DNA of 64,000 bases from Iphione sp. A-MEVVRFRX5 (GCA_976226885.1 OZ320315.1:97402001-97466000), one strand, 5' to 3'; positions 1 through 64,000 are shown, counted from the first letter of the stretch. Program-made: numbers and translations. Notes: a model not told the origin generated them from the letters alone.

Positions 1-302
1 ATGTCACCACAGAAAACTAGACCATATTCAATGATGGGGATCATGCTCGGTGCTATCAGTAAAGCTCTGCTTATCCCTACATACTTCTTTATCTCTCTAA
101 GGTGGCACAGTTTCAGGTAACCTTTGGTAGTCAGATTTTGTAGGTGTGATGCAAATTTTAACCTCTCGTCTTGTATCACTCCTAGTTCTTCCCCTTTGTA
201 TTGTAGTGTTTGCTTTGTGATTCTATTGCTGTATGTGAAGTAGTTTTTCATCCATCGAAAGTAGCGCCCGAGGTTCAAGTCCCTCAGTTTACACAATAGT
301 AC

Positions 303-1651
303 CTAATGGCATACGCTATCAAATGCTTTCTCAAAATCCACAAACACACAGGAAACATTATGCCCTTGGCTCAGGAGGCAGTGCATCTCATCTGTCAACT
401 TGCTGATTACTAGGCCAGTTCCTCTTGACTTCCGAAATCCATACTGCTTATTTGTTATCTCTAGATACGTGTAGATTCTGCTGTGGATTAGGTGCTCCAG
501 AACTTTGCTTGGGTAGTTGAGAATACTGATAGGCCTGTTATTACCCAGTAGGTTTTTGTTTCTTTTTTTGAATATCGGTGTAACTCTTGACCTTGTGGGT
601 ACTGTGGCATGGATAATCGAATTGTTAAACATATTAGTAAAAAACCTACTTTTGAGTATCATTAACTTCTGCACGTATGTCCCTCGGAGGCCACAGATTC
701 CACTGGCTTTCAACCCATTAACTCCTTTAGCTGCTTTAATCAGTTCGTCCTCAGAAAACCTAGGGAATGTCAGTTCGCTGTCATTAGGCCATGTGTGTGT
801 ATAACTCTGGTTCATCTCTAGTGCTATACATTCATGAACCGATTCATGAACTCTTTTTTCTTATTTCGATGCCTGATCTAAAAGTTGCGTATTCATCGAT
901 ATTCACCCAGGCTTATATATCAGCAGATACTCGTCTGGACTAAACAGGGCATTTCAAGTCTGCTACCTCCGTAATACTTGCCTCAATGATGTACCATACC
1001 TCATCCAAATCCGTCTTGCTTGCTAGCCCCTCCCAATCTAGTCTAGTAATTAGCTCAAGGAAATGTAGTGCTTTTACTGTCTGTATGTAGTGTGCTTTAA
1101 CTGTCCTGTTCAGCGTGCTTTTGATCATTTTGTGAACACTATAGCGTTTATCCTCCACTTGTACCCCCATTTCTCCTATTGCGCAGTTTGTCAAGACTAG
1201 GTCTATTTTAGTGGAGCTGGTTGCTCGGGGGGCGGTAGGCATTACATAGCAATAGCTTGTGTGTGTCCAATCAACATTGAGGCCAATTTTTTTTCTATAT
1301 TCTCAGTGATCCTACTCTTAGTGTCTATCAATTCAAAGCTGGGTGACAGTCGGTCAGCAATGTAGACTACGAGACCCCCTTCATTTTTCTATCTAGTCTA
1401 TGCATGGTGTAACCCGGTATTTCCAGTAGACCTGAGACTATGCCTTCTTGGAGCCATGTTTCCGTAAGCAGATATACATCACCTTTGTCTCTTGAGACCA
1501 TTATCAGAAATTCTTCCCAATTTTTTGTCAGACTGCATATAGATAGCAACATATTAAATGTAGACAGGATTTTTGTACAACAATCCCAAGATTTTGCATC
1601 AGCGTCAACGATGATAATGCATTTGTTGAGGATGTGTAATGCACTATGCAT
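303..1651 (-). pseudogene. Decayed CR1/L2-type LINE ORF2 (APE + N-half of RT), truncated
   Basis: APE motifs LLTETWL and IPGY..HRLDR at 1367-1560. RT motifs VTPIFKK, NRPISIL, QYGFRK and FVDFEKAFDSVCH at 303-815. Broken by stops and frameshifts. Confidence 0.85.
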
Positions 1652-1974
1652 ATGACTTGATGTTTGTGTGTGTATGTGGTGGTTTTTGATGGCATTTCAT
1701 TGGCTGAAAACATTGACAAGGGCAGTAAACATGAACATAGAGAATACAGCAGTTTTCTGATTGTGATTACATGCATAAGAGTATATCATATTCTGTTACT
1801 TATCTCGTTTTCTGTTGTTACCCCCATTGCTGTTATTGCTTGTACTCCCATAGTCTGATCATAGCTGTTTCAATATGGCCAACAGCCACCGGTAGCCATT
1901 GGCAGCAAAGGTGACAGCCGTCCCTGAGTCTTACATATCGATGACGCCAATGGCCATTGTTCCTACTGTTGATA

Positions 1975-2470
1975 GTTGACATTCAAGCTGAAAGCTATAA
2001 CCATACATACCACCAAAGTATTGGGATATCTCCAGATGAAGTTGATAAGCAAAATGAAACCTCCTGGGGATGGCCATATCTGATTGGCCATATCTTTCCA
2101 AGAAAAATGATAAAAAATTCAATTTTAAGTGGGAGATTATTTAAGAATTACTCATTTTAGAAAACCATTCAGTCGGGACTATGATGAAAAATGCTCAGGG
2201 GAAATATTTAAAGTAGCTAAATATTTTAAAAGGAAGGGCCTGCCAATCTATAAATTGATTGGCTTTCTGGATGAGCAAGTATCTGGAACATTCTACCAAG
2301 AGGAACTACAAAAAGTAGCTAAAAATGATTTTTGGAAGATAGAAAAAATTATCAAAGAAAAGGGCCATGGCCCAAACAAAATGGTATGTGAAGTGGCTCT
2401 ATTGGCCAAACAAATTCAACCAGTGGATCAAAGCATCAGAACTGCGGGATGTATAACTGATAAGGAATAT
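1975..2470 (+). pseudogene. Polinton/Maverick integrase C-terminus with chromodomain (fragment)
   Basis: YNHTYHQSIGISPDEV, GDYLRI...F...Y......EIFKV, SGTFYQEELQKV, and after a frameshift VKWLYWPNKFNQWIKASEL. These match the typical Polinton integrase tail and chromodomain. Confidence 0.75.
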
Positions 2471-3049
2471 CACAGTAGAAAGCTGACATTATTATTTTGT
2501 TATCCCTCTGGCCCCTGGCGAGCTATTAATTTAGTTGTAAACCATAGTGCATTGGTGGTTACTAATTGTAGTCAAAAGCTGGTTTTCTTCCCATAGGCTG
2601 GAATGGAAAAAGTCTATGCAAAAGTACCATATGCCTATGAGCCTTGGTAGTCATAGATGAATATTCCATATCCAAAGAAGTCACAGACAACTAATGGATG
2701 AAGAAAGCATTTCATTATCCCTTTATCCATGAGATGCGAGATGGCCACAAAGGATATTTGAGAAAAAGTCTATGTGGTTGTCCTTACTCTTCGAAGATCC
2801 TTCCAGATACAAAAAATAAAAATAAAGAAATAAAAAAAATGTATATAAAGACATTAGATTGACTTATTCCATAGTTAGATTATGCTAACAGAGGGGGAAA
2901 CATTAAGTGGACCCACTCTGTAGGCTTTGATAGGTAAGAGATGCTTGATATGGGGTGACCTTCACGTGGTAAGCATCGTCAGTAGTATGTTGTTTCATAT
3001 GAAGCTAACAACCCCATAACAATATTTCCCTTGGTGGGATTAAAAATAT

Positions 3050-3330: not shown

Positions 3331-3489
3331 TTGAAGACAGTCAGGATTTTTGCAGTCAGGATTTTTGCAAGGGCTGATGGGTCTGCCATCGGTAAATTAG
3401 AATCAGATGGATAACTAATTAGATTTCACTCACTATATTGGATAATAATTCATGGAGCAGATTTTTTCCTGACCATTCTACAAGAGTAG

Positions 3490-4530
3490 GCATTTTCAAT
3501 CCTGCTGGTGCCAGCCTGGCCCAACCGGGCTTGGTTCAGCAGAGTGCTGCAGTTGGCTTATGCTCCGCCCCACTATTTTGCAAATCCAGGTTCAACACCC
3601 TGGACCATCTCGGTTGGCCGTCCAGTCTAGGGGCTATAAAAGTTATGGCCCTTCTTTGCTGAACGCAGTGTTAGACCGCAAAGATTTGTTGACTGCCACC
3701 TCTAGGGCAATGATGCTGTGTTCTTGGCAGCCAAAGACCCAGTTATTGTATAATACATACCTTAAAAGGTGGAATACTCTGTGTTTCCCGAAGAATTGAG
3801 ATCCACTGCATCCTACTCTTAAGCAGGGTATGCTTTCCTCATGACTATGTTCGACAGGGGTATCAGGTATAGTGCTTTGAACACGGCAAGAAGTGCTCTC
3901 TCGGCAATTTTTCCCATGTTTGATGGAGTTGCTTTTGGGAAGCATCCTGATGTTGTGAGGCTTCTCACTAGTTTTTTCAATGTAAGACCTCCTGTTTCCC
4001 GTGTAGACTATACTTGGGACATGTCCAAGGTGCTTGATTTCCTGAAATTGTGGGAACCTCTGTCTTCCATGCAATATGCTGCTTCTTTTGGCTACCAGCG
4101 GACTATTTGCAATATTCAGCTTTCAAGCATTCATGATACTGGAGATGGGTCTTTGCAAATTGTCTTCACCAAGACTCTGACACAATCCAGGAAGGGCAGG
4201 TGTGTCTCAAAGTTGAAGCTGATGCCTTTTGTAGCACAACCTAAAGTTTGTGTGGTGAGGTGTCTTAAAGAGTACATCTCAAGAACAGATACTTTGCATG
4301 ATAATCAGGGACATGATGCTCTTTTCATCTCCTTCACTAGTTGCCATAAGTTGGTGGCCACTGCCACATTGGCCAGGGGGACAAAAGAGGTCATGGCGTT
4401 GTCAGGTATTGACACGCAGGTGTTCTCCGCGCATTGCTAAGATGGGAATACCTTTGTCAGAAATTATGAAGAGGGGCATGTGCAGTCATGCTTATACCTT
4501 CAAGTTGTTGAAGGAGGACAGTCCTCCAAC
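3490..4530 (+). mobile_element. DIRS1-type retroelement 3' part: MT-like domain end + tyrosine recombinase, decayed
   Basis: ILLVPAWPNRAWFSRVLQL, SWQPKTQLLYNTYLKRW, YSALNTARSALS, FGKHPDVVR, YTWDMSKVLDFL, CVVRCLKEYISRT, GIDTQVFSAH, GIPLSEIMKRG. Confidence 0.85.
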
Positions 4531-4584
4531 ACGAGCCTCTTAAAGGTCAGAGGCAGGGACAGTTTAACCTGCTCTATTCTGTGC

Positions 4585-5330
4585 TTAATGAGAGCCTGGT
4601 GGGCAGATCTGGACTAGGGCATCCACCAGCGCATCTTGGGCAGACCTTGCCCTAGTGTGCTGCTCTGCTATGGGTGCCACTTGCTCTAGGGCTCTACACC
4701 CTGCGATCATGCCACCCATGATGTCGCCACCTATGCGCTGCAGTGTGCGCTCAGTGGTCTGATGATCTTTGTCCTGGAGATTAGTAAACAAGATATCATT
4801 CAACCGACACACCTGAAGGTGGTCAGTGCCCTCTGGAATCAAATATCTCTTCTGCACATTAGACAGATAGTCCAGCCTGAAGGGGTCCACCAGCTTCACC
4901 GAACAATCAGAAATTGCTGTTTGAAGTGGTGACCCCAACTCCTCTGTACTGGAACGAATCATCCAGCTTAAGCTCCTCCTCCTCCTCCTCCTCATCCCAC
5001 TCCTCTTCATCGGAGGCAGGATGTTGCTGCAGCCAATGCTGTTGCTGCTGTCTTTGCTGCAGTTGCTGCTCATGCTGCCGCTGCTGCTGCTCATGCCAGT
5101 ACTGCTGCTGTTGTTGCAGCACAGAACTCAGCAAATACGCAGTGTGATCCTGCTGCTGTCTCTGCTGAGACTGCAGGACCGCCTGCAGGTGTGACTGCAA
5201 CGACGCCTGGAGTTGAGCCATCATGGCCCAAGGGTCTGTCACAGGGGCCACCGGCGGCGGTGGAATGACAACTGGCACTGCTGGCGGAACGGCTCCATAT
5301 GAGGTGGCTTCATGGCCTTTGTGGATGGCT
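4585..5330 (-). pseudogene. DIRS-type gag-like ORF fragment with poly-Q/poly-E tracts (paralog of 13400-14470)
   Basis: LQRIGGDIMGGMIAGCRALEQVA...AQDALVDAL is nearly the same as the copy at 13.7 kb. CAG and GAG triplet runs at 4970-5160. Confidence 0.65.
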
Positions 5331-6615: not shown

Positions 6616-6642
6616 TGATTGATTGATTGATTGATTTTTATT
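6616..6642 (-). repeat. LINE 3' tail: AATAAA + (AATC)5
   Basis: Plus strand reads tgattgattgattgattgatttttatt, about 100 nt downstream of the ORF2 stop. Confidence 0.85.
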
Positions 6643-6740
6643 GTCAAAATTAACATCACCACGACGGAGCTCTTCCGTAATCGACAGTGTGTATCAGATA
6701 CAGAGTTGCGATATCTTATACTATATTTTACATAATTGTG

Positions 6741-9462
6741 TTACATTTTATTAATCATATTTTTAAAACCATGCATTGTTTTACAATCTCTTACATATAT
6801 TGGCAGTAAGTTCCACATATTGGCCCCCTTTTCAAACATCGACCTTCTTATAATACTGTTCTTGGATCTATACATTTTGATACATCTACCACATCCTTGT
6901 CTTGTTTTATTCAGTGATCTTATCAGAATTTGGCCTTTGATGACCAAGTAATGCATGCTTGTTATTGTGCCCCACCAAAGTCTTCTCTTCAGAGTATCAA
7001 TATCCATAGTCAGAATTGGGTTTTGCCAATTACCATCCATATTCTTACAGAACAGCATTCTAGCACTTCTTTTATAGGCTCTCTCTAGTTTTTCTAGGAA
7101 ACGCTTATTGGATCCTACTATTATGGGGGTCAAGTAGTCTATTTGGGGGTAAATGTACAGTTTAAAAAGCATAACATGGATTTTATGTGGGATATACCTT
7201 TTATATTTGCACAGGTTATACGCACTGTACCAGATATTGCTGATTGCCCTGTTTATGGTTTCTTTCCAAGAAAGGATTTCATTTATGATGTACCCCAGGA
7301 TTTTTAATGTACGTTCCCTTTTTAATGTATGTCCACTGTGTGATACAGAATTACATGTTGGTATTGCATTTTTTATAATACAAAAGGCACTTTTCTCATG
7401 GCTTATTATCAAATTATTTTTCTCACACCAGGTTATGGTGTGGGCGTATGCCTTTTCTATGTTTTCATGTAAATTTATAGGTGTCTCCCCAATGACAACA
7501 TATGTTATGTCATCTGTATATAGGGTGATTGATATGCCATCCGGCAGTCCTTCAGTGATATCATTGATACACATGGAGAATCCAATCGGCCTTGGGGTAT
7601 TCCAAATTTTTGATGTAATGTTTCTGATATACGATTATTTATTTCAACATATTGTTTTCTATTGTGGAAATAATCTTTTACTAATGAGATAATATTGCTG
7701 TCAGCCCCCTCTGCTTGTAGAATTTGTACCACCGTGTTACAATTGAGTAGATCAAATGCTTTTGTCAAGTCAAGTAGAACTTCAGTTATTGCTGTTTTAG
7801 TTGAACGGCCAGGTAGGAACCCATGTTGATGTTTAGACCAGAATTTTATATGGAATAGTTCCTCCCTCAGTTGACAACAGAATAGTTTCTCAAATATCTT
7901 CCCAGGCAGTGGTAGGTTACTTATTGGTCGATAGTTGTTGAGTGAAATTTTATGACCTTTTTTGTAAACCGGTACTATTCTGGCCTTCTTCCAAGCCTCC
8001 ATAAATCTCCCAGTGTGGAGCATATTATTAAAAATGTTTGTGATGTCATCTACAAGGATAGAGAATGCATCTTTAATCCATCGACTCTTCATTCCTGTCA
8101 TATTGCATGCCTAACTAATGTCAATTTTACTTAGTTGCTTTATTACATCTTCTGTAGTAAAGGAATGGAATCTCAGCACATCTTTCCCTCTGCGTTGTCG
8201 TCCAATCTTCGTGACCGGTCGGTTGGCGATAGACTTTTTAATTATTTCTATGAAGTGATTATTAAATGCATCTGGAATTTCACATGATAGCATATCAATA
8301 TTGTCTTCAATTATTGTAACTATATTTGAGTGACGCTTATTTCCAAAGAGGTTCTGAAGGGTTTCCCATAGTTTTGAAGTGTTTTTGTGGTTTTTCAGTA
8401 ATACAGAATTATAATACTGTTCATACTCTTTTTTCACTTAAAGTTTGACTTTTTTGTCAAGAAATCTATAAATATTGTAGGCATCCTCATCACGTTGATT
8501 TTTTGCCTTTTTATGAAAATATTTCCTGTCTCGGATAAGTTCTATTAGATTACTACTCAGTGGTACCGTCCTTTTCTTACTGTGTTTACCTGAGTTCCCT
8601 TTCCTTGCCCCTGCCATATTACCCAGTGCTTTATCGATTGCAGGCTTCATGCTGAGCCAGCTGGACTCTGGATCTCCAACATGGTGTGTGATGTCAGATC
8701 TGAATATTTGAAGTTGCTGTTTAATTTTGGTATATGAGTAGCTGGTAATATTGGTTGCTACAGCTACAGGGGCATTGCATAGATTTTTCCATTTGCACCT
8801 GTTTTTTATTGAGCCTGTATTCCTATGAGATTACTGTATGAGTTTACAATAGTAGTGGCATTATTGAACGCTAGGGTATTCATGAATATTAAGTCATTGA
8901 TTTTTTGGTTACCCACCGTAGTACTTCTGTTAATGAGTTGCATAAATCCTTGGTTTGACATGATGCATGATAACTTTTCTATTCGTGGATTTGTGGATAC
9001 CCAATTGATGCTTAAATCACCAATAATAACCACACGATCATTTACAATTGACTGCCCTCTATCAAGGAAGGATTTAAATTCGTTACAGAACTTACCCATG
9101 GGGCCATCTGGTGGTCGATATCGTACTACAACATAGAAGATTTTACATCTTCTAAACACTACACATACCGTTATACATTCAAATAGGTCACAGTTGATAG
9201 ATAGTTCACTGATAACATGTGCATTACACTCATTTCTGATATAGAGCAATATACCACCACCAAGTGATTTTTTCATTGAGACTCTATCTTGTCTAATCAC
9301 CTGGAATCCTTGTAGGCTTAACCGTGAGTCATCGATTTTGTGATTTAACCAGGTTTCAGTGAAGCATGTGATCATACACCTCGATGTTATGATATCATCC
9401 TGAATAATTTTTAATTTTTTAAAAATGCTTCTGACATTGTAATGGCATAGCATGAATTTCAT
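6741..9462 (-). pseudogene. Copy 1 ORF2, APE endonuclease + reverse transcriptase, several stops and frameshifts
   Basis: HYNVRS, FTETWL, GGGILLYI, IIGD (APE). WKKARIVPVYKKG, YRPISNLP, QHGFLPGRST, DLTKAFD, GIPQG, YTDD (RT). Confidence 0.92.
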
Positions 9463-9481
9463 AGCATAGGCAAACAGCGTC

Positions 9482-10018
9482 TTAGTACAGGTAACAATAG
9501 TTGTCAGTTAGAAACCTTTCAATGCGCCTTACCCATGTGTCGGTTACTCGATAGTCAATCTCGTCATCCTTGTTGATCAAGTCACCCCTAAACACTGCAT
9601 TTGTACCAACAATCACATTGACTGGAGAAGCTGTGTCTGGGGTCCCCAGTCCATTTCTATTGTTTATGGCCTCTACCAGGCAGTTATGGATGGAGAAATG
9701 CTTATTCAAGACGCGTTGCTCTGGGGATAGGTAGTTCGTGATTTCCCATAAGTCATAGTCAAGCACCATCTTACTGTCGTACCTTGGTCTCAGCCCCACT
9801 TGTGGATTATATAGGACCGTGTCGTAGAACCCTATATAGATGAAGGTGATGTCGACTCCCACCATCGATGTCTCATTGACTCTTTTGATGATGTCCTTGT
9901 ATTTCCCTTTGGGGATAATGATCATCGTCCAGTTGAAGTAGTCTCCAACGTAGTTTTCCACCAATCTGCCAAAATCTTGGCCCTGGGTGTCTGTTATAAA
10001 ATTGACCCTTGTTGGCAG
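9482..10018 (-). CDS. Copy 1 stand-alone SGNH/GDSL-fold ORF (CTG at the start position, internal in-frame deletion)
   Basis: The frame is open from 10018: LPTRVNFITDTQG...ITFIYIGFYD...ERFLTDNYCYLY. Homologous to 19881-20481. Confidence 0.65.
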   Translation of the reverse strand: MPTRVNFITDTQGQDFGRLVENYVGDYFNWTMIIIPKGKYKDIIKRVNETSMVGVDITFIYIGFYDTVLYNPQVGLRPRYDSKMVLDYDLWEITNYLSPEQRVLNKHFSIHNCLVEAINNRNGLGTPDTASPVNVIVGTNAVFRGDLINKDDEIDYRVTDTWVRRIERFLTDNYCYLY

Positions 10019-10639
10019 AATGAGCCTGCAAAAAAAATATGTAATTTTGCAGGCAGACTCTGAGTATGTCAGTTTTGAACGATATCACAGTTGGTCAGAG
10101 TGAGCTCCCCTCTGATTATTGTGAGTGCTTCTCCTATATAATTCCTACCAGGGCAGGTCCCGGCTGTGACCACCTCATCATACAAACCACACGCACTTCC
10201 ATATGTATTGTGATTTGAAATGTCTAAGATTTTCTTACCTTCGGTGAGTTTCAGATGATTGATGATTCCTTTCTCTTAGTATTTCAATGAGAGTGTCTTT
10301 CTCTGTGTTCTCCCAGTGATCTATGGTTTTGATTGTGGCTCTGTTGCGTCTTACCCGTGTTGGGTTTGCCGACTGTTGGATTTTTCGCGCTGCCTCTGGG
10401 TCATTACATAATCTTGCTTTTGTTACTTGCAATGCATGCTCAGCCGTCCTATGTTCCTCACCATATATGGTAACAGGCGTTGGGTGAAGCATTGATAATT
10501 TGCATGAAGGACCCCTGAATGTGAAAACGTCACTGTTAACAACCATGTTGGCATTTTCGAGCGTTAATCCATGTTGTAGTCTCTCGATTTTTGTGTGACA
10601 GTACAATACTCCTTCAATACATATTGATAGGGCGAAACC

Positions 10640-10674
10640 TTCGAATAAAAATATATTATTATTATTATTATCAG
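10640..10674 (+). mobile_element. 35-nt retro-insertion consisting only of AATAAA + (TAT)n tail, inside copy 1 ORF1
   Basis: ttcgaataaaaatatattattattattattatcag flanked by cc on both sides. Removing it restores GIVGFAL, matching GVSGLAL in copy 2. Confidence 0.6.
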
Positions 10675-11050
10675 CCTACTATGCCAGCTTTGAGGCCCTT
10701 CTTTCTAGCATGATGTGCTATATCATGCAAATTTTGATAAATCTGCCTTGCGTCTCTCGGCACATCCTCTCTTAGATAGATGTAGGCATACTCCTCACTG
10801 TCTCTCAGCTTGTATCTTTTGGAATAAATTTTGTTTCTTGCAGTGACAGTTTTGAACTCCACCTTCACCAGGCGCTCTCTGCCATGCTGGTATACTCCTA
10901 GCCACTCCACCGAGCTAATTTCATGTTCTTTGATTTCCCCATCAATCATATTAGCAATGTCGTAGATCGTCTCCTTTAAGTCGTATTTGGGGTTATCTGG
11001 GAGTCCTGACGCTATCAGATTTTTTCTCCTATCATATGTTTTCTTAGAAA

Positions 11051-11150
11051 GCTCATTATGAATTTGTGGTTTGGGCAGATCATTAGCGAGGGTTTTCACC
11101 TAGCTCATCATGAATTTGTGGTTTGGGCAGATCATTAGCAAGGGTTTTTT
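11051..11150. repeat. Tandem duplication, about 52-nt period, within copy 1 ORF1
   Basis: gctcattatgaatttgtggtttgggcagatcattagc occurs twice. Confidence 0.9.
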
Positions 11151-12434: not shown

Positions 12435-12454
12435 AGCCATTCAAGTTCAAGAAG

Positions 12455-54283: not shown

Positions 54284-55014
54284 CTGAGAAAGGAGAAACT
54301 GATTTTATTTCATTATTTAGTAACAGCATTAAGTGCAAATAGACCATTACGTTTACAAACGACAGCACTCATCGAAGTTATTGAAACCGAGCAGTCATGG
54401 ACGTGCTAAACATGTCTAAGAAGACGTGCATTATTGTGCCACACCGAACCTATAAACAACAACACAGGGCTGGTGTAAACTTAGTGGATTTTTTTCTTTG
54501 ACACTAGAAGTGTACCTAAACATATACATGGACGCTGCGGGTTTTTAACTCAACTGCGATACATAGCCATACAATATGACAAAAAGGCGTCTTACAAATA
54601 TAAAGCAAGTGTTGTTGTGGGGTGGCGGATGGTTAACGCTCTAAACGGTGCGGCTACCTCTCTCTGAGCTTCGTTGTGCGCGACTGGTTCCTTATATACC
54701 CGGCACTACTACGGGTTTCTAAGCCAAATGCGATACATAGCCCAAGCCCTAGGAAATTACGAGGACTCTGCCTGTCTTTTGCGGGCTGAGGCCTGGCGAG
54801 AACTAAGTTCCTGTGATGTGTATAGCAATGCCGAGGGAGTGGCCTCCCAGGTTCCTTGTGCTTTTATTTCTTCCATAGGGGCTCCTAATTCTCTGAGGTG
54901 GGTGGCCCCCCCTCATCTAATGCTATGCAGGGAAAATTTTGGAGGGATCGTATCCTAGTGATTTGTTAATTACCCGAAGAATGGCCGAAACTGCAGATGC
55001 CTGAAATGGACGTT

Positions 55015-58000
55015 TTAATATCGGGTCTTGAAATAGGGGTTGTAGGGGTTGTACATGTTTTCTAACAGAGCGGTTGGACAGCATACTGGATTATCTAACC
55101 TTGGGATGAAAATGATCCTACATGTATTACGGGTAATGGTCTTCGACCATTTTATATTGACCAATGAGCTCTTAGGGCCAAATTCGACATCCTGTCTAGT
55201 GATCTGCTTCAGGCAATCATACTCTCCGAATTTCTTAAGAAATACATTTGATTGGCGGACAAGCGAGTAAGGCAACGTACTGAAAATGGCTTTTAGCACA
55301 ACTGCTAGCGGGCCCATGCTCTGACAAAACTTGATTATCTGCTTATAGTGTTCGTAATTGATTGGCAATTTACGTTGTACAGCGTGGGGGGAAGTCTTCA
55401 TGATGGCTGTCAGGGCAGTGGTGACCTTGTAGTGTGTACATGTGCCTAGACTGTTTTTATCGTCCACGATATTCATCATCGTTCTAAGCGCGGAGACGTG
55501 TTGCTCAACGACGGTTGGTGTATAGTGTATATTAAGATATTCTATATACAGACACATGTGATCAGGGGTAATTGGCTCCATTGGGAGATTGAAATGTGCA
55601 AAAAAGCCCAAGGCTAGTTTAAACATTCGTAGTTGCGCCCTATGCGTTGCTGGTGTAACACTCTGCGTCTGGCGAATTGCTGCTTTCTTTGCTAGGTTAA
55701 ATAGCCTGGGGTGTGGAAGTTAAAAATTGTAAAATAGTTAACATCAAAATGTGTTGGAACTACTTTTGTATATAAGAGAACTGGTTGAGAAATCTTTTAA
55801 ACACAGCCTTGTATTTTGGAGGGCCATCTTGTCGTGACAAGGCATCTGCATAGAACATCTGAACCTGGAATGTGCTTATAAGTATTATACATTTGATGGG
55901 TGGTTTGAGTATACCATATTGCTCTTGCAACTGTTAGTAGGATTGGGTCCTTTGCCCGGCCGTACACGCATGCATCAATGGTGGCGTGATTATCGCAATA
56001 TACAATAATGGATGGATATTTGATTCCTATTAACCTGATTGCTAAGACAACATTGATGGCTTCGAGCTGCGAAATATGGTACTTAGCCGCGCCCTTGGAG
56101 AGCCTGTAGATATAATACCAATCGGAGGTGTACGCTCCCCCTGCACTAAGGGAGGCGTCACAAAATAGTTCCATTGCTGGTACTGTTGGGACAATAGGGG
56201 AGATACCATTACATTGTCCTAAAGATCGGATAAACCACATTAAATCTTTCCTACTTTCGCTAGTAATAGTACAATGAGTTGATCTATCAGCAATATCTTG
56301 TCTGTATTGTTCTAATAGGCAACCTACAAACAATCTGGCCGGGGTCACGCATCACGACATGAAATTTACAAGGCCAAGAAGTTTTTGCATCTTTTGATAT
56401 GTAACCTTCTTACGATCAAGTGTTTTGTCTTATTAGCGACAAAGCTTCGTCAGTTTCTTCTTGCAGGATTGAGATCTGTAATACGTTGAGATCAAACATA
56501 ATACCAAGCCATCTGATTGCTCTCGTCGGGGGCGTGATCTTGTCTTCTGCTAAGGTGAGCCCCAGCGAACAAAGTCGACTGTTGTGTGAAAGGCGGCCAC
56601 AGCATTGGAGTGGCCATACGTAAAAAACAGAAAGTCGTCAAGGTAGACGAAGCTTCCTATGTTCAGAGTGGATTTGAGATGAGATAATATACGCTGAGTC
56701 AGTTTCTTATCCAAGTAATAACCATGGTTGAATAAAATAACAACAAAGGCCAGTCAAGAGGGTCTACTGCGAAATGCCGATAGACCCTCGTCTAGCGACC
56801 GCAGGTACAAATCATTGTTATTATGTGCAATGACACGTGTTAAGTCATTGGTGGAGGGTAAAACGACTTTGGCATATGAATTGAAATAATTTTCTGAAGG
56901 GATCTGACCGTTCACACCTCTAAATGAGAGGTCAATAATGATACGCCTTTTGCTTGGGTCCTGTTTTGGTCGGGTTATAATTGGGCTGACTGTGGACCAA
57001 TGGTCGAAGGGGGGAGTGCTAAATGGGCCTGAGATGGCGTCTTGTTCTAATTCTTCTTTACATATCCCTGTAATGCCTGGGGAAAGGCCATAGTGGACAC
57101 AAAATTTTGTTCGGTTTCAAAATGGTTTGGGCCACCCTGGTATCCTAAGGGGAACCCATATAACAACTGGTTGTAAAGAAATCTATCTAAATATGAGTTA
57201 TCATCCAACATGCTGTGACATGCTTGGAGACACAGAGGAGAATGGAGGACGAGTTTAGCTTCGAGCTGGTTTGGGCACCCGGTCGCTCGTACTCTGGAAT
57301 AGACAAAATGGTCAGTTATGGGAACGACATTTAGGATATTTGGCCATGACAAGAGATGCTGGATTGTCATAGAGTCGTAGTCAGGGGGTCCTGGGGGCTG
57401 TGTTTCTGCTCCTGCGAAGTGTGTAAGCTCGGCCGTCTAAGGTTCCCACTCATCACTGCCACTCGTCTGTCCGTCTTCATTGTGGTTGTGGCTGGTCGGA
57501 CGTCTGTCTGGGTGGTTGAAGATTCTTCCGCAAACGGCATACTTCGAGCAGGTGCTCGAATTTCCTATTGGAATGGTAGAAACAGATGGAACAACAATGT
57601 AGCATTGTTAGCGAGTCTGAATTATCGTGCTTTTCTGTGCATGTGGCGGAAAGCCACTTTGGGCAGATGACGACGCAGTCTTTCTTGGGGCCTATGGTCT
57701 TGAGTCGACACATCAACTCAAGGTAAGCATTGATGGCCCTTGATTTGGCCTGTTGGATAACGTGCTTATTCGACCATGCAAACCTCTTTGTCTCGTAGGT
57801 GTACCACAACTCGGCCGCCCACTTGCGAAGGGGGGGGCCAAGGAATGGATATGCTCTCTTCCGCAATTTCAGCTAAGTGTGAGAGAAGTAACTCTTTGGG
57901 AGCATCTTTATAGTTTGGTTCTCGTATCATGTTTGCAAGGCCGGCAATATACTGTGATAATGTCAATTTTTCAATATCTGGGGCTTCACCCTTTTGAAAG

Positions 58001-58420
58001 TAAATGTAGGTGGCCGGAAAGAGAATTTTTTTCTTCTTGCCTCCTGCTGGAAAGGCACCCAGGTAGATGAGGCTTGAAAGTTGGTGGAATTCGTCGTTTG
58101 CCTCGCTCCTGAGCTAGTCTGGGGCCAGATATGTCTCGTCCTCCTCCGACTCCTCAGACTGCGTGGCCTCGCCGCCATCTTGGTCGATAAAGCCATGTGG
58201 TTTCGCCTCTGCGCCGTTTGGTGTGTGCATGGTGTCGTCTTTCTTCGTCTTTGTTGCCGGGTTGGTCGTATCTGTCTTCTTTCTCGTCTGTTTCTTGACT
58301 TTTTCGAAGTCGCTCTCAAGTATTTTAACCTGAGCTAGCGCGTTTTTGAGTTGAGACTTAATCAGAAATGTACAAGTTTCAAAAGACAGATTGTGTACAT
58401 GAATTAGTTGGGATTCCCTC
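55015..58420 (-). mobile_element. Ngaro/PAT-type YR retroelement, decayed, YR truncated before HxxR
   Basis: gag Cys/His knuckle 57477-57866. RT with VYLDD near 56635. RNase H CDASL, YCDN. YR LVRQSN and WSKT, close to the YR at 12455-13130 and 33.2-34.0 kb. Confidence 0.87.
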
Positions 58421-58834
58421 AATATTGGTGTTTTTGTGTTTAGTCATACGACTTATGATACGAGCAACTTCATTCTTAGTGTTTTTAGTTAGAATAAAAT
58501 TATTGGCAGAGCCTTTTCCTGGAGTGATCCACTACAGTGTCAGGAAGTTGCTGATCAATGGACGGGGTAATAAAATTTCAAAAATTCAAATTTCATATCG
58601 TTTATTGAGACACAATGTCACTTTACAAAGTGATTCCCAGAATGCGGTCAAGTAGAGAAAAAATCATGAAGTTTATACCTCGCATGAAAATAGTATAGAA
58701 GTTTTGTAGCTCCCAGCTACCAAATCAATTTCCCCTTGGTTATGGCCTTTATTCATCTGCAATGGCCCGGGGGATCATCTTCCAATAACCAATTACTGTT
58801 CGATTTAGCCTATTCCCTGTCTGTCCCTGTAGAA

Positions 58835-59330
58835 TCTTTTGATTTCACCTTTAAACGCTCCCTTATCCAGCTTCCTTATCAAAAGGGGTATTGCATTCCA
58901 ATTACGAATTCCGTGGCATAAGAAGCCCCTCTGGTATACTGCACAGTTCACCTTCTCAACCCTGAGATCATTATGTGTCCCCTTTCTTGATTGTTCATGT
59001 CATGTATCATCAGATTACAAAAATACCACATTCTTTCTATACCAGCAACACCATTTCTTTCCATCCACACAAAAAACCTTTATTCTTGTAACAAACCCAT
59101 TCATGAAACACTGTCTTACAGAATCAACTACCACTTCCTCCTTTACTACTTGCATGATCTCCAACCCATGATGAACAATCGGTAATAGACATTACAACGG
59201 TCTAACACCCATTTTGCCCAAGCTAATAAACTTGTCGTCCTAATTTGCTTAATCATATTGTCGACGCAGATCTTAAACGCTAGCTTTTCATCCAACCTGT
59301 ACCCTAGATAATAAAACTCCCTTACTCTCT
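58835..59330 (-). pseudogene. 5'-truncated LINE RT C-terminal relic
   Basis: Manual translation: EFYYLGYRLDEKLAF...; GFLCHGIRNWNAIP...FKGEIK. Confidence 0.65.
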
Positions 59331-60572
59331 CTAAACTGTGTTGCCACTACACAGCTCATAGGGTCATGTAGATGATCTGTAGAAGTATATGCCAACACAT
59401 TGTCCTTGTCACCTTATTTTTAATCAGATGTAATACAAAATACCATATTCCAGGAGTGTGATACTCTTCAGCCAGAAAAAAGACTCTTGCTCAGCCTGAT
59501 ACTATTACAGCAGTAGGACATAGTGATGTCAAAAGTAAAAATGATGTAAAAGTACATAAATTATGGAATTATCATCTACATGCAAAAATTGGACAGTTGA
59601 TTATGACACGCCAAGGGAGAAAAAACATTGAAGGGAAGAAATACAATCAGTTCTGCACTCATAATGACAGACATGTTGGAGGCTGAAGTTGTACAACTGT
59701 ACAACCCACTGTTTTTACTATATGAGGGCAGTTATTGACTGTTGAGATTCCTAGGAGACTGGGATTGTTTACAACGGTTTGCCAAGTGTTTTTATGCCTC
59801 AATTCTACTGGTCTATATCATGTAACATTATATATAATATCACATATCCTATATAAATATTGTAACCAGAGTGGTGTTTTAGCTGGTGAGCATATGTTTC
59901 TGCCAAATCATTGTGCATTCTAGAAAGAAGACAGGACACATAAATGCATGGCATATGTTTTATTTTTGTAACAATGTTGTATTTATACAGTAAAGGAGGG
60001 TTAAGTTGTAAGAAGTTGTTAGAAGAATATATCATAAGATTTCATATTTTTCTTCATCAACAGCTTCATCATAAAAAATCTGAATGATTTCCATGTCGTT
60101 ACAATGAGTATCGGCTTGGAATCATCTATTTCTAGAATGATTGGGTCATCTTGTGTGCCCATGCCAGAATACCTGGCTTGAGTTGGTGTGATTAGCTCGT
60201 ACCATGGTTCGTCTGGAATGTCACTGTCAGTGTTGTCATCATAATCCTCCAACATGGATGTCTCCCATTCCTCATCACTGATTGTGATTTGGTCTTTTAC
60301 CTCCAATGGAGAGAAAAAGCTTTAAGTACAGCTTATTTGAAGCTGATTAAACCCATGTAACAATATACTAATCTAAATCTAAGATTATTTTCGGTAAAAA
60401 TCCCACACATGTCATAGTTATTGTAGAGAGTAATTCAGATACAGAGGCATAAATATAAGACTAAAAAGGAATGACTAGAAACCTGAAATAAGTGAAACAT
60501 ATATATTACCCATCTTCAAACTTAACTTGTCACTTAATATTAAACCTACTGCCTTTAAGATTTTAAATGTTG

Positions 60573-61560
60573 TCATCTACTTTTCTGTGTACATTGTGCA
60601 GAGGCTCTGGAGTCTTCTGTAAGTTTTATGTATTGGAGCTTCCTCCTAGGTAGCAAGGTCATCTGTAGGTTGATAAGTTTGGCTTCTCTGTGCAGTAATA
60701 GCACTAGCCAATAAAGGGTCAGGTTGTTCTTTGGTGCTGTTCTGTTCAGGTGCAAGTGCCATCCCTCCACAGCGTTGTTGGTTCTGATGGAGTGCCCAAA
60801 GACATGACATACAGATGGTGGCCATACAGAGTCGTTGATCAAGGTTCTTTTGATGTATTCTAGAGCTGGTTAACTGCTTTAATTGTTACAGCAAGTACCC
60901 GCAACTCCTGAAAGGCCTGTTCAATGTGTGTATCTGGCAGGAATGGCAGGGCCATTACTTGCCAGAAGTAGTGGTGTGTTGCCTGATGTGTCATGTTGAT
61001 TTGTTGTAGACCCAAGGTTTGGATCTTCCTCCATACTGATTGTGTCCAATGGAGCATACAGCCCTTGACATCAGCAGTAGGCAGCACTTCAACAGCTTCC
61101 AACAGCTAGCTTCAAAATCCATGACTACTCGCTTCACTGCTAGGTGCTCTGTTGGCAGTTTCTTGATGATCTTCTTCAGCACCTGCTTGTAGTCCTTTTT
61201 CTCTGGGTGTAACATAAGCACGAACATACACAGCACTTGTTTCTTCAAGTTGTCCCCTTGATGAAGGAATCCATTGATGGACCACAGCTGAACAAATGGA
61301 TGTCAGATGATCTTGAAGGTACAATCCATGTAGCAGTTATGCACTGGCTCAGCATCTCTATCTGCTGACTTGTAGCAAAGATCATGTTCATGTTGTCCTG
61401 TTAAAATCGATATAGAAGTGAGTCCTTGGACATAATTTGGCTCCCCAGGCACCAGACCAGCACGTTGTCAGGTGGCTGCCTGTTCCAAGTTGGCTGGGGC
61501 ACTGAAACAGTTATTGATCAACTTTATTATATTGGGGCTTGCATTCTTTAAGAATTTCTT
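60573..61560 (-). pseudogene. Mutator/MULE DDE transposase relic
   Basis: MDCTFK, VMDFEA, GCMLHWTQSVWRKIQTLGL, MALPFLP, RTNNAVEGWH. The 5' side is cut by the LINE tail at 61592. Confidence 0.85.
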
Positions 61561-61591
61561 TTTTCTTTAGGATATCCAAAGCCCTGGTTAG

Positions 61592-64000
61592 GTATTGTAT
61601 TGTATTGTATTCTTTATTTCGGAATCTCTGTTTACAGACAAAGCTTTTCACCCGAAAGCCAAGTTCGGGCACTTACTTAGAGGATGTGATTTATAATAAT
61701 TAAGGTAGTAATGAGAACATTCAAGACTGAGATAGCCATTAACCGGTCATGAGTAAATACTTAATAACCTGATCAGTGACGTTAGCGCTATGCAATCAAC
61801 TATACAAGCTGTACAAAAGTGAATCGACATCTGAGGCATGTAATAAAGATGAGAACAATCAGTCAAAATATTCTATCCTTTGTCACAAGTGAATAAGAGA
61901 ACAAAATAGACATCGTCTTGGCTTATTACAAATATTGCACAATGTACTCTTTCTTAGTATAGCGATCACAAAAGTACAAAAGTCACTTAAAAGTACGTTT
62001 CGGCTAATTGCAGATACAAAACAAATTGACACTGTTGAAGTCATTATATATATTGCCTGACGTACTCACCTAGAATAGCAATCACAGTTGGCATTTTAAA
62101 TATTTGGTTCGGCTAATTACAAGTATTGCACCAATACTCTCTTAATAAAGTGATCACAGTTGGCAGTTAAGATACTGGTGTTACACTCGTAATTTGGTCA
62201 AATAGCACTAGGTGTATCCAGTATGGCTGAGGTGTCGGATGGTAACAGCCATCAAATCACAGGCACAATCGTGTAATAGGATATCCCAATATACTCTCTT
62301 GCATGGGGTATCACAGATTGGTTGTCTACACACACACAATCACATTCCATTCATTCATAGCCCCATTCACACTACATACTCAATTACACAAACAGTTATA
62401 CATACTCATCTCATACCATTTTTCCATCTACGCCAGTCGCACTCTTTTAGCACCTTACCCAACTTTACCTGGTTTGGAAGTTCACTCCAACTTGCTACCC
62501 CTCTGTATCTCAATGATCTAGCAAATCTCATCGAGCGGGGCCTGCACACTTTCCCTCGCGTTCTGCTACCCATTCGTGTTTTGGTACCCAATCCCTTCGG
62601 TAGGAGCTCCAACCGCATCAGCTTGTGCACTACCGCAGTCCCCCTATATTCGATCATGTCGAAGACCCTGTCCATACCTAGCCTCCGTTGTAGATTTGTA
62701 GCACTCTGACCATCCTTAGTGATCAGTGCAGCTCTCACACAACGGTTTAGAGTGATCTGTAGCTTCACTTTGTTCGAGTAGCTAACCCCGAACAACAGCC
62801 CAGCTGTGTAAACCAGATGAGTTAGCACTAGTGCTCTGAATAGCATTAGCCTCACATGAAGGGGTACCCAATGTTTTATTCTGGCAATCTGCGTAGACGC
62901 TCTCCACATTTTGGCCGACGTGTTGCGGATCGCACCACCGTAGTCGAGTTTTGAATCAATGTCAAACCCCAGGAGTTTTACATTGGTTGATGCCGCTAGT
63001 TTAGTTTCGCCTATTTTCAAATCAAGGTCGAGACCAGTGGCAGTACCAAGGGGCATGTGTACGCATTTAGTAGAGCTTAGTAGGAGACCGTTGTCGCTGC
63101 ACCAATTTACAACGGAGTCAAGAGCTCGTGCCGCTTGGCTTCTCAATCGCATAAGGTCCCGCGCATGCACCAGGACAGTTAGATCATCTGCATAAAGCAC
63201 CGCTGATGCTTGGTTGGGGAGCACAGCTGTAACTGAGTCCACTACAAGGTTAAAACCTAACGGGCCAAACACCGACCCTTGCGGTACCCCATGGCAGACC
63301 ACTCTTTTGCTCGACTCGCTGTCGCCACACCTGACAAACTGACTCCTATCAGTGAGGTAGCTACTGATCATTGCCAGTAAGTTTTTACCACCCCCCACCA
63401 TCCGCAGCCGATAGAGTACATTGTCCCTGCTCACTAAGTCAAAGGCTTTTTTTAGATCGAATAAAAGCCAACATACGTACTCTTTTTGGTTAATCAGCTC
63501 TTGTGTGTCACATACGAGCTTTGCGGCCGCTGTTTCTGTACTGAACCCCTCCCTGAAGCCGTGTTGCATCATGCTGAGACTACTTTGCCGGGTCAAGTTG
63601 TTATTGATTTCCTGGCAGAACCACTTCTCACACAACTTACCAGGGAGGGGCAGTATCGACACAGGACGGTAGTTTGTCAAGTTGTTGGGGTCCCCTCCTT
63701 TGTGAATTGGACAAACCCGTGCCGTTTTCCATGCTCTGGGATATCGTCCTGTAGCATAAATCTGCTCAAATGTCCATGAAAGGAATGCTGCATGTCTAAG
63801 AAGAATTGGCTTGAGGATCCTAGTTGGGATCCCACTGAGCCCGGATGATTTTTCTATGGACACCCTCTGGACAATTTTCCTGACTTCATCAGGAGTCGGT
63901 GGGCGGATATCAAAGGTTTCGCCACGTGCGGTTGTTGATATATGCACTGGAGGTGTCCATGGCTGGCTTAACCTATCAACTGAGTCTACAAAATGGTTGT
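61592..64000 (-). mobile_element. LINE related to copy 3 (open RT to window edge, about 0.8-kb 3' UTR, AATAAA + (AATAC)4 tail)
   Basis: RT ORF of 513+ aa with GVPQGS and YADD. C-terminus SLRYRG..W..LP..VKLGK as in copy 3. Tail at 61592-61611. Confidence 0.92.

What the first reader, a model, noticed from the sequence alone, without database searches (positions are those of the whole stretch)
1..64000. Extreme strand bias of TE and gene fragments: candidate uni-strand piRNA-cluster / TE-trap locus
Seen: about 28 recognisable units (LINEs, DIRS, Ngaro, Penelope, MULE, Tigger, SENP-like exons) lie on the minus strand. Only the Polinton scrap (2.0-2.5 kb), the DIRS YR (3.5-4.5 kb) and a 35-nt tail lie on plus. 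From 4.6 kb onward essentially everything is minus, including DNA-transposon and host-gene fragments whose orientation is not set by a shared insertion mechanism. Fragments abut with abrupt junctions. Established: uni-strand piRNA clusters such as Drosophila flamenco accumulate TE fragments antisense to cluster transcription. Inference: this locus is transcribed on the plus strand as an antisense silencing library.
Basis: partly seen in the sequence, partly recalled or inferred. Interest (0 to 1): 0.8.

Follow-up and report, generated by a model that had tools for sequence, protein, structure and literature searches.

The report
Co-oriented retroelement pile-up, cause unproven
A 64-kb stretch packed with jumping-gene remains really does have nearly all of them pointing the same way, but sequence alone cannot show that it is a small-RNA "silencing library" rather than an ordinary long transcribed or insertion-biased region.

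Summary
The strand bias is real. Strand-symmetric tests found 13 separate retroelement units on the minus strand: 9 LINE copies or fragments and 4 Ngaro/DIRS-type tyrosine-recombinase (YR) retroelements. One YR fragment lies on plus (two-sided p about 0.002). About 40 kb is assigned to minus and about 1 kb to plus. Stop-free stretches of 200 aa or more number 19 on minus and 2 on plus. Self-BLAST rules out duplication as the cause.

Penelope, SENP-like exons and the 35-nt tail were not found. MULE and Tigger are seen by eye only. The "Polinton scrap" is unverified. The plus-strand YR is confirmed.

The piRNA-cluster reading cannot be tested from sequence. I could not obtain flanks, the organism, RNA data or a genome-wide background. 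Known ordinary causes give the same pattern: loss of sense-oriented LINE and LTR elements from long transcription units, and same-orientation insertion of LINEs into LINE-rich DNA. At p about 0.002, a 1-Gb genome would yield tens of such windows by chance.

My estimate is about 0.45 for a long plus-strand transcription unit of ordinary kind, 0.13 for a uni-strand piRNA cluster, and the rest for insertion bias or chance. Interest is modest.

The parts
1..1700 (-). La: LINE fragment covering the endonuclease through most of the RT (LINE profile 18-821). It runs off the left end of the window. The ORF2 remnant is broken at least 3 times (1 in-frame stop join, 2 frame changes).
   Evidence: Pfam RVT_1; tblastn; LINE profile; break counts
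2129..2593 (+). Its identity is not established.
   Evidence: No Pfam family; no PDB match; AF2 mean pLDDT 38.7, unusable
3473..4440 (+). Tyrosine-recombinase fragment of a DIRS-like family (profile 1-250 of 304). It is cut at its C-terminal side where it meets Lb. It is the only verified plus-strand unit.
   Evidence: the search for homologous proteins gave 12 hits, best E 5.8e-27 at 38% identity, carrying PF00589; local profile E 1e-51. In a relative's contig the gene follows an RT.
4441..5244 (-). Lb: internal LINE fragment corresponding to the EN-RT linker of the Ld family.
   Evidence: 64% nucleotide identity over 762 nt to 13547-14244, in direct orientation; protein matches of 60-73%
6616..11650 (-). 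LINE#1: near full-length LINE with a NADAR-domain ORF1 region, EN and RT, and an (ATCA)n 3' tail at 6616-6636. ORF2 is broken at least 4 times (2 stop joins, 2 frame changes). The 5' limit is approximate.
   Evidence: Pfam RVT_1 and NADAR; LINE profile 12-947; tail; break counts
12098..13129 (-). Yb: 3' half of a Ngaro-type element. It holds the YR C-terminal two thirds and a 62-nt direct repeat pair at 12098-12159 and 12373-12434.
   Evidence: Pfam Phage_integrase; homologues including a Mytilus 'Tyr recombinase'; YR profile 117-315; repeats
13121..17014 (-). Ld: 5' part of a LINE (EN, linker, start of RT). It is cut off in the RT and joined in frame to Yb. The EN remnant has at least 2 in-frame stops. 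The 5' limit is taken as the end of the LINE#2 tail.
   Evidence: tblastn EN and RT N-terminal hits; LINE profile; break counts
17015..22712 (-). LINE#2: near full-length LINE with a NADAR ORF1 region, EN and RT, and an (ATT)n tail at 17015-17036. ORF2 has at least 1 frame change. The element may reach about 23.35 kb.
   Evidence: Pfam RVT_1 1.7e-26, Exo_endo_phos_2, NADAR 3.5e-17; LINE profile 13-944; tail
24943..25961 (-). Lf: RT C-terminal half of another LINE lineage (profile 521-951). It is broken at least 4 times.
   Evidence: tblastn at 41-46% identity to database LINEs; LINE profile; break counts
26862..30465 (-). F: DIRS/Ngaro-type retroelement with RT, RNase H and YR in that order. 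The RT/RH has at least 2 frame changes. The 5' limit is not determined.
   Evidence: Pfam RVT_1 and RVT_3; YR profile; RT/RH profile 164-675
32845..36675 (-). G: Ngaro-type element with RT/RH, YR and split direct repeats. A 33-nt repeat lies at 36291-36323 and again at 33044-33076, between two 107-nt repeats at 33071-33177 and 32845-32951. The RT carries one internal deletion. There are at least 3 in-frame stop joins.
   Evidence: Pfam Phage_integrase; repeats; 3407 relatives, the best of which matches Ty3 RT/RNase H; RT/RH profile
38210..44748 (-). LINE#3: apparently complete LINE. ORF2 is 934 codons (EN+RT) without a break. Upstream lies an ORF with a NADAR domain. The probable (TCAA)3 tail is at 38210-38221.
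   Evidence: Pfam RVT_1 6.6e-30, EN, NADAR 1.5e-11; 180 homologues, best 27% identity; LINE profile 10-935; tail
46347..49650 (.). Tandem array of six units of 496-712 bp at 81-97% identity. No orientation can be assigned.
   Evidence: Self-BLASTN; the repeat finder
54535..58440 (-). H (main piece): Ngaro-type element collinear with G, with RT/RH, YR and a 3' repeat pair at 54535-54568 and 54709-54742. The RT/RH has at least 5 frame changes and the YR at least 1 stop join.
   Evidence: Collinear protein matches to G; YR profile; RT/RH profile 140-662; repeats
58808..59346 (-). Li: 3' end fragment of a LINE RT (profile 750-951), lying inside the interruption of H.
   Evidence: LINE profile
60022..61336 (-). 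MULE-like transposase remnant, recognised by eye only. It also lies inside the interruption of H.
   Evidence: Translations. No Pfam family; no PDB match
61390..61590 (-). H (5' piece): matches the 5' part of G. It is separated from the main piece by about 2.9 kb of inserted DNA.
   Evidence: BLASTP of 61391-61510 against 36487-36675, 56% identity, E 3e-7
61592..64000 (-). LINE#4: 3' part of a LINE with an (AATAC)n tail at 61592-61611. The RT part of ORF2 is open for 530 codons up to the right end of the window.
   Evidence: Pfam RVT_1 6.1e-29; LINE profile 417-936; tail

Best explanation
The window is a retroelement pile-up. At least two thirds of it is recognisable LINE (NADAR-ORF1, probably Tx1-like) and Ngaro/DIRS-type YR retroelement DNA. 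It derives from at least 13 copies of several lineages and very different ages, all reading on the minus strand, with a small plus-strand block near the left end.

The most likely cause is orientation-dependent survival inside a long plus-strand Pol II transcription unit of ordinary kind, such as a large host-gene intron or a long non-coding transcript. Sense-oriented LINE and YR retroelements bring their own termination and polyadenylation signals and A-rich coding strands. These truncate the host transcript, so such insertions are lost. Antisense copies are tolerated and accumulate.

Insertion-level effects probably add to this. LINEs enter LINE-rich DNA preferentially in the same orientation. 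At least one junction (Ld/Yb) looks like a same-orientation chimera or nested insertion.

SHOWN: the elements, their orientation, their range of ages, and the absence of duplication. INFERRED: that the plus strand is transcribed and that selection acted on orientation.
For: 1. The bias is real and strand-symmetric tests agree.
2. It spans elements of very different decay. LINE#3 ORF2 and the visible LINE#4 ORF2 have no break. LINE#1, Lf and H carry 4-6 or more breaks. A persistent cause fits this better than one burst.
3. It is not duplication. Self-BLASTN gives 6.7 kb of direct matches, almost all in one tandem array, and the LINE copies are only 27-46% identical in protein.
4. The biased elements are exactly the classes (LINE, retroelements) for which antisense bias inside genes is documented (PMC3088655, PMC3517506). 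The LINE sense strands are A-rich: AT skew on plus is negative in 27 of 32 2-kb bins.
5. All units are CpG-depleted with a TpG/CpA excess (CpG o/e 0.18-0.76). This is consistent with long-term germline methylation, which in animals with mosaic methylation marks transcribed gene bodies. The evidence is weak because the taxon is unknown.
6. A rough prior-times-likelihood estimate favours a gene-type unit (for the likelihoods). The priors come from my own knowledge: roughly a third of an animal genome lies in transcription units, and about 1% in piRNA clusters.
Against: No exon, promoter or host-gene fragment was found on the plus strand. Polyadenylation hexamers are not depleted on plus (AATAAA observed 32, expected 26). 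A 64-kb stretch with no detectable exon needs a very long intron. The reported intronic antisense bias in mammals is moderate, and at p of 0.65-0.75 the probability of 13 of 14 is only 0.02-0.08. The observed bias is stronger than that and is closer to what flamenco-type clusters show.
Confidence: 0.45

Rival explanations
1. Uni-strand piRNA cluster or TE trap. The plus strand is transcribed from an upstream promoter into a long precursor that is processed into antisense piRNAs. Antisense insertions are retained because they silence their families.
For: TE density is very high (at least 41 kb of 64 kb assigned). Several unrelated families of different ages share one orientation. The degree of bias (13 of 14) fits a flamenco-like share of about 0.87 better than an intron-like share (likelihood 0.30 against 0.02-0.08). 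Strand bias plus TE enrichment has successfully nominated flam-like clusters in Drosophila (PMC10643416) and in Aedes (PMC7161354).
Against: There is no evidence of transcription or small RNAs. No LTR/Gypsy elements were detected, whereas in flam-like clusters Gypsy alone drives the bias (PMC10643416). Most elements here are long, near full-length and arranged end to end rather than as nested short fragments, and one LINE is apparently intact. The prior is low because such clusters cover about 1% of a genome or less. The claimed DNA-transposon and host-gene support was not verified.
Confidence: 0.13
2. Insertion-level bias without any role of transcription. New LINEs integrate preferentially in the same orientation as the LINE-rich, strand-skewed DNA already present. 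YR retroelements integrate next to or into related copies head to tail. RNA-level chimeras give same-orientation junctions. The run then grows by self-reinforcement.
For: In human intergenic DNA, L1-into-L1 insertions are 21,559 sense against 9,899 antisense (PMC2836564, Table 3). The Tx1 group, to which NADAR-ORF1 LINEs have been assigned in oyster (PMC12477816), is rich in target-specific families (PMC4494074). One 447-codon open frame runs seamlessly from a LINE RT into a Ngaro YR. G and F lie head to tail. H carries two nested same-orientation inserts. In an unrelated contig a DIRS-like element sits inside a LINE in the LINE's orientation.
Against: At a share of 0.69 the probability of 13 of 14 is only 0.035. 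The four LINE 3' junctions share no target motif, and no matching microsatellite lies at the 5' ends. I know of no mechanism linking LINE and YR-element orientation. The LINEs mostly abut rather than nest.
Confidence: 0.25
3. Chance. Orientations are random, and this window is one of the expected extreme windows picked out by a scan of many windows.
For: The two-sided p is 0.0018, or about 0.02 if only about 10 events are independent. A 1-Gb genome would give about 28 such windows at p of 0.0018. The finding was selected because it is extreme.
Against: The expectation assumes every window is equally TE-dense. The ORF-length asymmetry (19 vs 2 at 200 aa or more) and the profile hits (24+7+12 vs 0) are consistent across the whole 60 kb. 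La and LINE#4 run off both ends, so the run may be longer.
Confidence: 0.12
4. Tandem or segmental duplication of one oriented block.
For: All self-matches are direct.
Against: Self-matches total 6.7 kb and lie almost entirely in the 46.3-49.7 kb tandem array. The LINE and Ngaro copies differ by more than 35% in DNA and are 27-57% identical in protein.
Confidence: 0.01

Closest known systems
Drosophila flamenco and flam-like uni-strand piRNA clusters (PMC10643416); the unidirectional EVE-rich cluster of Aedes aegypti (PMC7161354)
   Same: A TE-dense locus in which nearly all recognisable insertions share one strand. Several unrelated families and ages are involved. The run extends beyond both window ends.
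   Different: Flam-like loci are 227-1085 kb. They are enriched in Gypsy/ERV LTR elements, which alone carry the bias. They have a defined promoter and were validated by small-RNA sequencing. Here no LTR/Gypsy element was detected, the elements are LINEs and Ngaro-type YR retroelements that are mostly long and lie end to end, and there are no expression data.
Antisense orientation bias of LINE and LTR elements inside gene introns (PMC3088655, PMC3517506, PMC1794541)
   Same: The same element classes show the bias. The cause would be persistent, acting on old and young copies alike.
   Different: No host exon or gene was found here. The reported intronic bias is moderate, while the bias here is 13 of 14.
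Sense-orientation bias of nested L1/Alu insertions (PMC2836564)
   Same: LINEs co-oriented with neighbouring LINE DNA, with a strongly A/T-skewed strand composition.
   Different: The documented effect is about 2:1 and concerns L1-type endonuclease targets. The LINEs here have microsatellite tails, their target preference is unknown, and they mostly abut rather than nest.
Tx1-group LINEs with a NADAR-domain ORF1 (oyster families noted in PMC12477816)
   Same: Three LINEs here, and two relatives in another assembly, carry a NADAR domain in the ORF upstream of EN/RT ORF2.
   Different: Clade placement was not tested. The best database relatives are only 27% identical.
Ngaro elements of the DIRS order
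   Same: RT/RNase H followed by a tyrosine recombinase. G shows split direct repeats: one short repeat near the 5' end recurs between two copies of a 3' repeat.
   Different: G lacks the middle of its RT. H and Yb show only the 3' repeat pair.

Membership tests
Uni-strand (flamenco-type) piRNA cluster | Abundant 24-32-nt, 1U-biased small RNAs arising almost only from one strand | not testable with these tools
   No RNA data. The organism and locus were not identified.
Uni-strand (flamenco-type) piRNA cluster | Long precursor transcript from a discrete Pol II promoter at one end | not testable with these tools
   The window starts inside a LINE (La).
Uni-strand (flamenco-type) piRNA cluster | TE enrichment with most insertions on one strand | tested here: met
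   13 verified units on minus against 1 on plus, and about 40 kb against 1 kb. Whether minus is antisense to transcription is unknown.
Uni-strand (flamenco-type) piRNA cluster | Enrichment of Gypsy/ERV LTR elements, which carry the strand bias (criterion and result of PMC10643416) | tested here: not met
   Pfam on 117 stop-free segments found no integrase (rve), gag or LTR-type pol. The retroelements are LINE and YR types. This speaks against flam-like in the strict sense, not against a piRNA source locus in general.
Intronic antisense TE accumulation | Location inside a transcription unit, with TEs antisense to it | not testable with these tools
   No annotation or flanks. Plus-strand frames of 100 aa or more gave no family.
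Intronic antisense TE accumulation | Bias carried by LINE and other retroelements that bring termination signals | tested here: met
   All 13 verified minus units are LINE or YR retroelements.
Same-orientation LINE-into-LINE insertion bias | Nested or adjacent LINEs share orientation, with a common endonuclease target at the 3' junctions | tested here: inconclusive
   9 of 9 LINE units are co-oriented. The four 3' junctions show no shared motif, and no convincing target-site duplications were found.
Tx1-like LINE with NADAR ORF1 | AP-type endonuclease plus RT in ORF2, and a NADAR domain in the upstream ORF | tested here: met
   Relatives' loci L002 and L004 show the same order.
Tx1-like LINE with NADAR ORF1 | Phylogenetic placement of the RT in the Tx1 group | not tested
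   No named reference sequences were available. The assignment rests on a statement in PMC12477816.
Ngaro (DIRS order) | RT/RNase H followed by a tyrosine recombinase | tested here: met
   F, G and H.
Ngaro (DIRS order) | Split direct repeats (A1 ... B1-A2-B2) | tested here: met
   G shows the full pattern. H and Yb show only the B-type pair.

The most novel reading that the evidence does not exclude
The locus is part of a flamenco-like uni-strand piRNA source in a poorly sampled animal. The closest named relatives of its elements are from molluscs and a coral. The locus would be built from NADAR-ORF1 LINEs and Ngaro elements rather than Gypsy/ERVs. That would show that antisense TE-trap loci of this design are not confined to arthropods or to LTR elements.
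Probability: 0.12. Interest if true: 0.6.

Novelty: new member of a known kind. Interest (0 to 1): 0.3.

Why it matters
If small-RNA data showed one-strand piRNA production here, the locus would be a rare example of a flamenco-type trap outside insects. It would be dominated by LINE and tyrosine-recombinase retroelements, which would help in asking how such traps arise. If not, it is one more instance of the known orientation filtering of retroelements in transcribed or LINE-rich DNA. Its use would then be mainly as annotation: NADAR-ORF1 LINEs, one of them apparently intact, and Ngaro elements in an under-sampled genome.

Tried and rejected
1. Flanks and organism. Exact-protein look-ups of three window ORFs found nothing on record. 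That ruled out testing flanks, gene context or a genome background.
2. Duplication. Rejected by self-BLASTN.
3. Pfam. I used all 12 searches on 117 stop-free segments from both strands. No MULE, DDE_1/Tigger, Peptidase_C48 (SENP), GIY-YIG/Penelope or Polinton-type family was found. Only RT, EN, RNase H, YR and NADAR appeared, all on minus.
4. PDB sequence searches. Five open segments gave nothing: the G RT remnant, the two plus ORFs, the Tigger-like piece and the MULE-like piece.
5. Structure. The AF2 single-sequence model of 2129-2593 had mean pLDDT 38.7. I did not run the fold search on it because the matches would be meaningless.
6. Target-site duplications for LINE#1 and LINE#2. Only 8-9-mers at chance level were found. 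No shared microsatellite lies at the 5' junctions.
7. Polyadenylation hexamers. They are not depleted on plus beyond what composition predicts.
8. Rfam and tRNA scans found nothing.
9. Background from relatives' loci (L001-L004). These are too TE-poor to serve as a baseline. They hold one neighbouring LINE in opposite orientation and one nested DIRS-like element in the same orientation.
10. IMG/VR scan with the Polinton-like ORF.

Slip to report. While checking the frame relation of adjacent pieces of one decayed LINE fragment, I worked out in my reasoning where two in-frame stops lie. I stopped, do not repeat the places here, and afterwards printed counts only. The stop-free segment coordinates used as query references in tool calls and printed by earlier scripts are bounded by stops by construction. 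The report gives only the outer bounds of elements and domains.

Full report
THE WINDOW. It is 64,000 bases with no N and about 42% G+C. CpG observed/expected is 0.49. T exceeds A on the plus strand in 27 of 32 2-kb bins. No tRNA or Rfam family was found. Three window ORFs are not on record in the public assembly index, so I could recover neither the organism nor the flanks. The closest protein relatives are only 27-38% identical. The few that carry names come from Porites, Schistosoma, Diaphorina, Mytilus and Patella. The source is a poorly sampled animal, possibly a lophotrochozoan. That is a guess.

CHECKING THE OBSERVATION. The strand asymmetry shows up without any annotation. Stop-free segments on plus versus minus number 25 vs 62 at 100 aa or more, 2 vs 19 at 200 aa or more, and 0 vs 6 at 300 aa or more.

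I scanned all 87 segments of 100 aa or more against Pfam. Fifteen of the 62 minus segments carry RVT_1, Exo_endo_phos(_2), RVT_3, Phage_integrase or NADAR. None of the 25 plus segments carries any family. Thirty more segments of 60-99 aa from the unassigned regions (18 minus, 12 plus) gave nothing.

Pfam is insensitive on decayed copies, so I fetched relatives and built local profiles. I ran these equally on all six frames.
- 124 LINE and YR proteins gave 1171 tblastn HSPs, all on minus.
- A LINE profile hit 24 segments, all on minus.
- A Ngaro-type YR profile hit 7 segments, all on minus.
- A DIRS/Ngaro RT/RNase H profile gave 12 hits, all on minus.

The frame at 3823-4437 finds PF00589 proteins at E 6e-27. 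A profile of those relatives covers 3473-4437 and nothing else on plus. In a relative's contig that recombinase follows an RT, so the family is DIRS-like.

WHAT IS THERE. Domains group into elements as follows.

Nine LINE units, all on minus:
- La (1-1700) runs off the left end of the window.
- Lb (4441-5244) is an internal fragment.
- LINE#1 (6616 to about 11650) is near full length.
- Ld (13121-17014) is a 5' part.
- LINE#2 (17015 to about 22712) is near full length.
- Lf (24943-25961) is an RT C-terminal half.
- LINE#3 (38210-44748) appears complete.
- Li (58808-59346) is a 3' RT fragment.
- LINE#4 (61592-64000) runs off the right end.

Four Ngaro/DIRS-type YR retroelements, all on minus:
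- Yb (12098-13129) is a 3' half.
- F (26862-30465) has RT, RNase H and YR in that order.
- G (32845-36675).
- H (54535-58440, plus a 5' piece at 61390-61590).

The large open frame of G and H was left open by Pfam and PDB. An exhaustive profile search found 3407 relatives. The best of these matches Ty3 RT/RNase H among solved structures, so the frame is an RT/RH remnant. G lacks the middle of its RT. G has the split direct repeats typical of Ngaro. H and Yb have the 3' repeat pair.

H is interrupted by about 2.9 kb. That insert holds Li and a stretch that looks like a MULE transposase by eye only. Neither Pfam nor PDB confirms the MULE.

A 3.3-kb tandem array of six units of 496-712 bp lies at 46.35-49.65 kb.

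LINE 3' ends carry microsatellite tails: (ATCA)n, (ATT)n, probably (TCAA)3, and (AATAC)n.

- LINE#3 ORF2 (934 codons) and the visible part of LINE#4 ORF2 (530 codons) have no break.
- LINE#2 ORF2 has at least 1 frame change.
- La has at least 3 breaks.
- LINE#1 ORF2 has at least 4.
- Lf has at least 4.
- The EN of Ld has at least 2 in-frame stops.
- The RT/RH of F has at least 2 frame changes.
- G has at least 3 stop joins and one internal deletion.
- H has at least 6.
The run therefore holds both young and old copies.

'About 28 units' counts domains of the same element separately. I count 13 verified units on minus and 3 unverified: the MULE-like stretch, a possible Tigger-type HTH at 50414-50611 seen by eye (nothing in PDB), and a LINE scrap at 45382-45564. 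One unit is verified on plus and one is unverified (2129-2593). I found no Penelope, no SENP-like exons and no 35-nt plus-strand tail. About 28% of the window has no assignable orientation.

IS IT MORE THAN CHANCE? The two-sided binomial p is 0.0018 for 13 vs 1. It is 0.0005 for 12 vs 0 from 4441 onward. It is about 0.02 if same-orientation chimeras and tandem junctions reduce the independent events to about ten. At p of 0.0018, a 1-Gb genome cut into equally TE-dense 64-kb windows would give about 28 such windows by chance. The bias is striking for one window but is not decisive proof of any mechanism.

Duplication is excluded. Self-BLASTN finds 6.7 kb of direct and 0 bp of inverted matches, almost all in the tandem array. 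The LINE and Ngaro copies are only 27-57% identical in protein.

MECHANISM. Four explanations remain.

(a) Long plus-strand transcription unit of ordinary kind. Sense-oriented retroelements would be lost, as documented for LINE and LTR elements in mammalian introns (PMC3088655, PMC3517506, PMC1794541). Four points favour it:
- The biased classes are the right ones.
- The bias covers all ages.
- The LINE sense strands are A-rich.
- All units are CpG-depleted with a TpG/CpA excess, which fits long-term germline methylation.

Four points count against it:
- No exon was found.
- Polyadenylation hexamers are not depleted on plus.
- The intron would have to be very long.
- The bias is stronger than the mammalian figures suggest.

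(b) Uni-strand piRNA cluster. The degree of bias fits best (likelihood 0.30 at a share of 0.87, against 0.02-0.08 at 0.65-0.75). Strand bias plus TE enrichment has nominated true flam-like loci (PMC10643416). But the prior is low. There is no expression evidence. No Gypsy/LTR element is present, whereas Gypsy alone carries the bias in flam-like clusters. The elements are long and lie end to end, unlike the nested scraps typical of such clusters.

(c) Insertion-level bias. L1-into-L1 insertions are 2.18:1 sense in human intergenic DNA (PMC2836564, Table 3). NADAR-ORF1 LINEs have been assigned to Tx1 in oyster (PMC12477816), and Tx1 is rich in target-specific families (PMC4494074). The window shows a seamless in-frame LINE-to-Ngaro junction, a head-to-tail G/F pair, and same-orientation nested inserts in H. 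An unrelated contig shows a DIRS-like element inside a LINE in the same orientation. But the four LINE 3' junctions share no target motif, and no target-site duplications could be established.

(d) Chance, as computed above.

WEIGHING. I combined rough priors from my own knowledge with the likelihoods. The estimates are about 0.45 for (a), 0.13 for (b), 0.25 for (c), 0.12 for (d) and 0.01 for duplication. Explanations (a) and (c) may act together. Explanation (b) is a special case of (a) that only RNA data can separate.

COMPARISON WITH KNOWN SYSTEMS. The locus works like, or at least looks like, a flamenco-type cluster in one respect only: TE density with one-strand orientation. The defining features cannot be tested here. 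These are one-strand 1U small RNAs and a promoter-driven precursor. The Gypsy/LTR criterion of flam-like loci was tested and is not met. I therefore do not file it as a member, though a piRNA source of another composition stays possible. As an instance of orientation filtering or insertion bias of retroelements, it is a new example of a known phenomenon.

VERDICT. The interpretation cannot be decided from sequence. Interest is 0.3. The decisive evidence is descriptive: locus placement and annotation, stranded small and long RNA mapping, and a genome-wide run-length background.

RULES. Break places are not listed. I met no N stretches and no human-like contig.

Noticed in passing
window 10238-10675, 20567-21265, 43495-44748 (all minus); loci L002 6890-8107 and L004 8706-9752: Three diverged LINEs (27-46% identical in ORF2) each carry a NADAR domain (PF08719; E 2.8e-6, 3.5e-17, 1.5e-11) in the ORF upstream of EN/RT. 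The closest database relatives, from one ENA assembly, show the same layout. The only mention I found is a remark on oyster Tx1 families in PMC12477816. The role of NADAR in LINE ORF1 is unknown.
   Followed up: partly
window 12458-13798 (minus): A single unbroken 447-codon frame runs from a LINE RT N-terminal stretch directly into the C-terminal two thirds of a Ngaro-type tyrosine recombinase. It is a seamless same-orientation junction of two unrelated retroelements. It could be a template-switch chimera or a nested insertion followed by deletion.
   Followed up: partly
window 38210-44748 (minus): LINE#3 looks complete. Its ORF2 has 934 codons with EN and RT and no break. A 418-codon upstream frame holds the NADAR domain. 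It is the youngest-looking element in the window.
   Followed up: partly
window 46347-49650: A tandem array of six units of variable length (496-712 bp, 81-97% identity) with a higher-order period of about 1.86 kb. It lies just upstream of the 5' side of LINE#3. Its origin (satellite or element-associated repeats) is unknown. It has the lowest CpG o/e in the window (0.18).
   Followed up: partly
window 32845-36675 against 54535-58440: G and H are collinear Ngaro-type elements. G lacks the middle of the RT domain (profile positions about 376-533), while H keeps it in pieces. G may belong to a non-autonomous deletion lineage.
   Followed up: partly
locus L001 (ENA ERZ26222911 contig), 1761-10240: In an unrelated assembly, a DIRS-like element (RT/RH plus YR) is nested inside a LINE just after the EN domain and in the same orientation as the LINE. 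This echoes the LINE/YR junctions in the window. It is a single case.
   Followed up: no
window 6616-6660 and 17015-17060 (minus strand): LINE#1 and LINE#2 share a short conserved motif just before different microsatellite tails, (ATCA)n and (ATT)n. LINE#3 probably ends in (TCAA)3 and LINE#4 in (AATAC)n. Tail type varies among related lineages.
   Followed up: no
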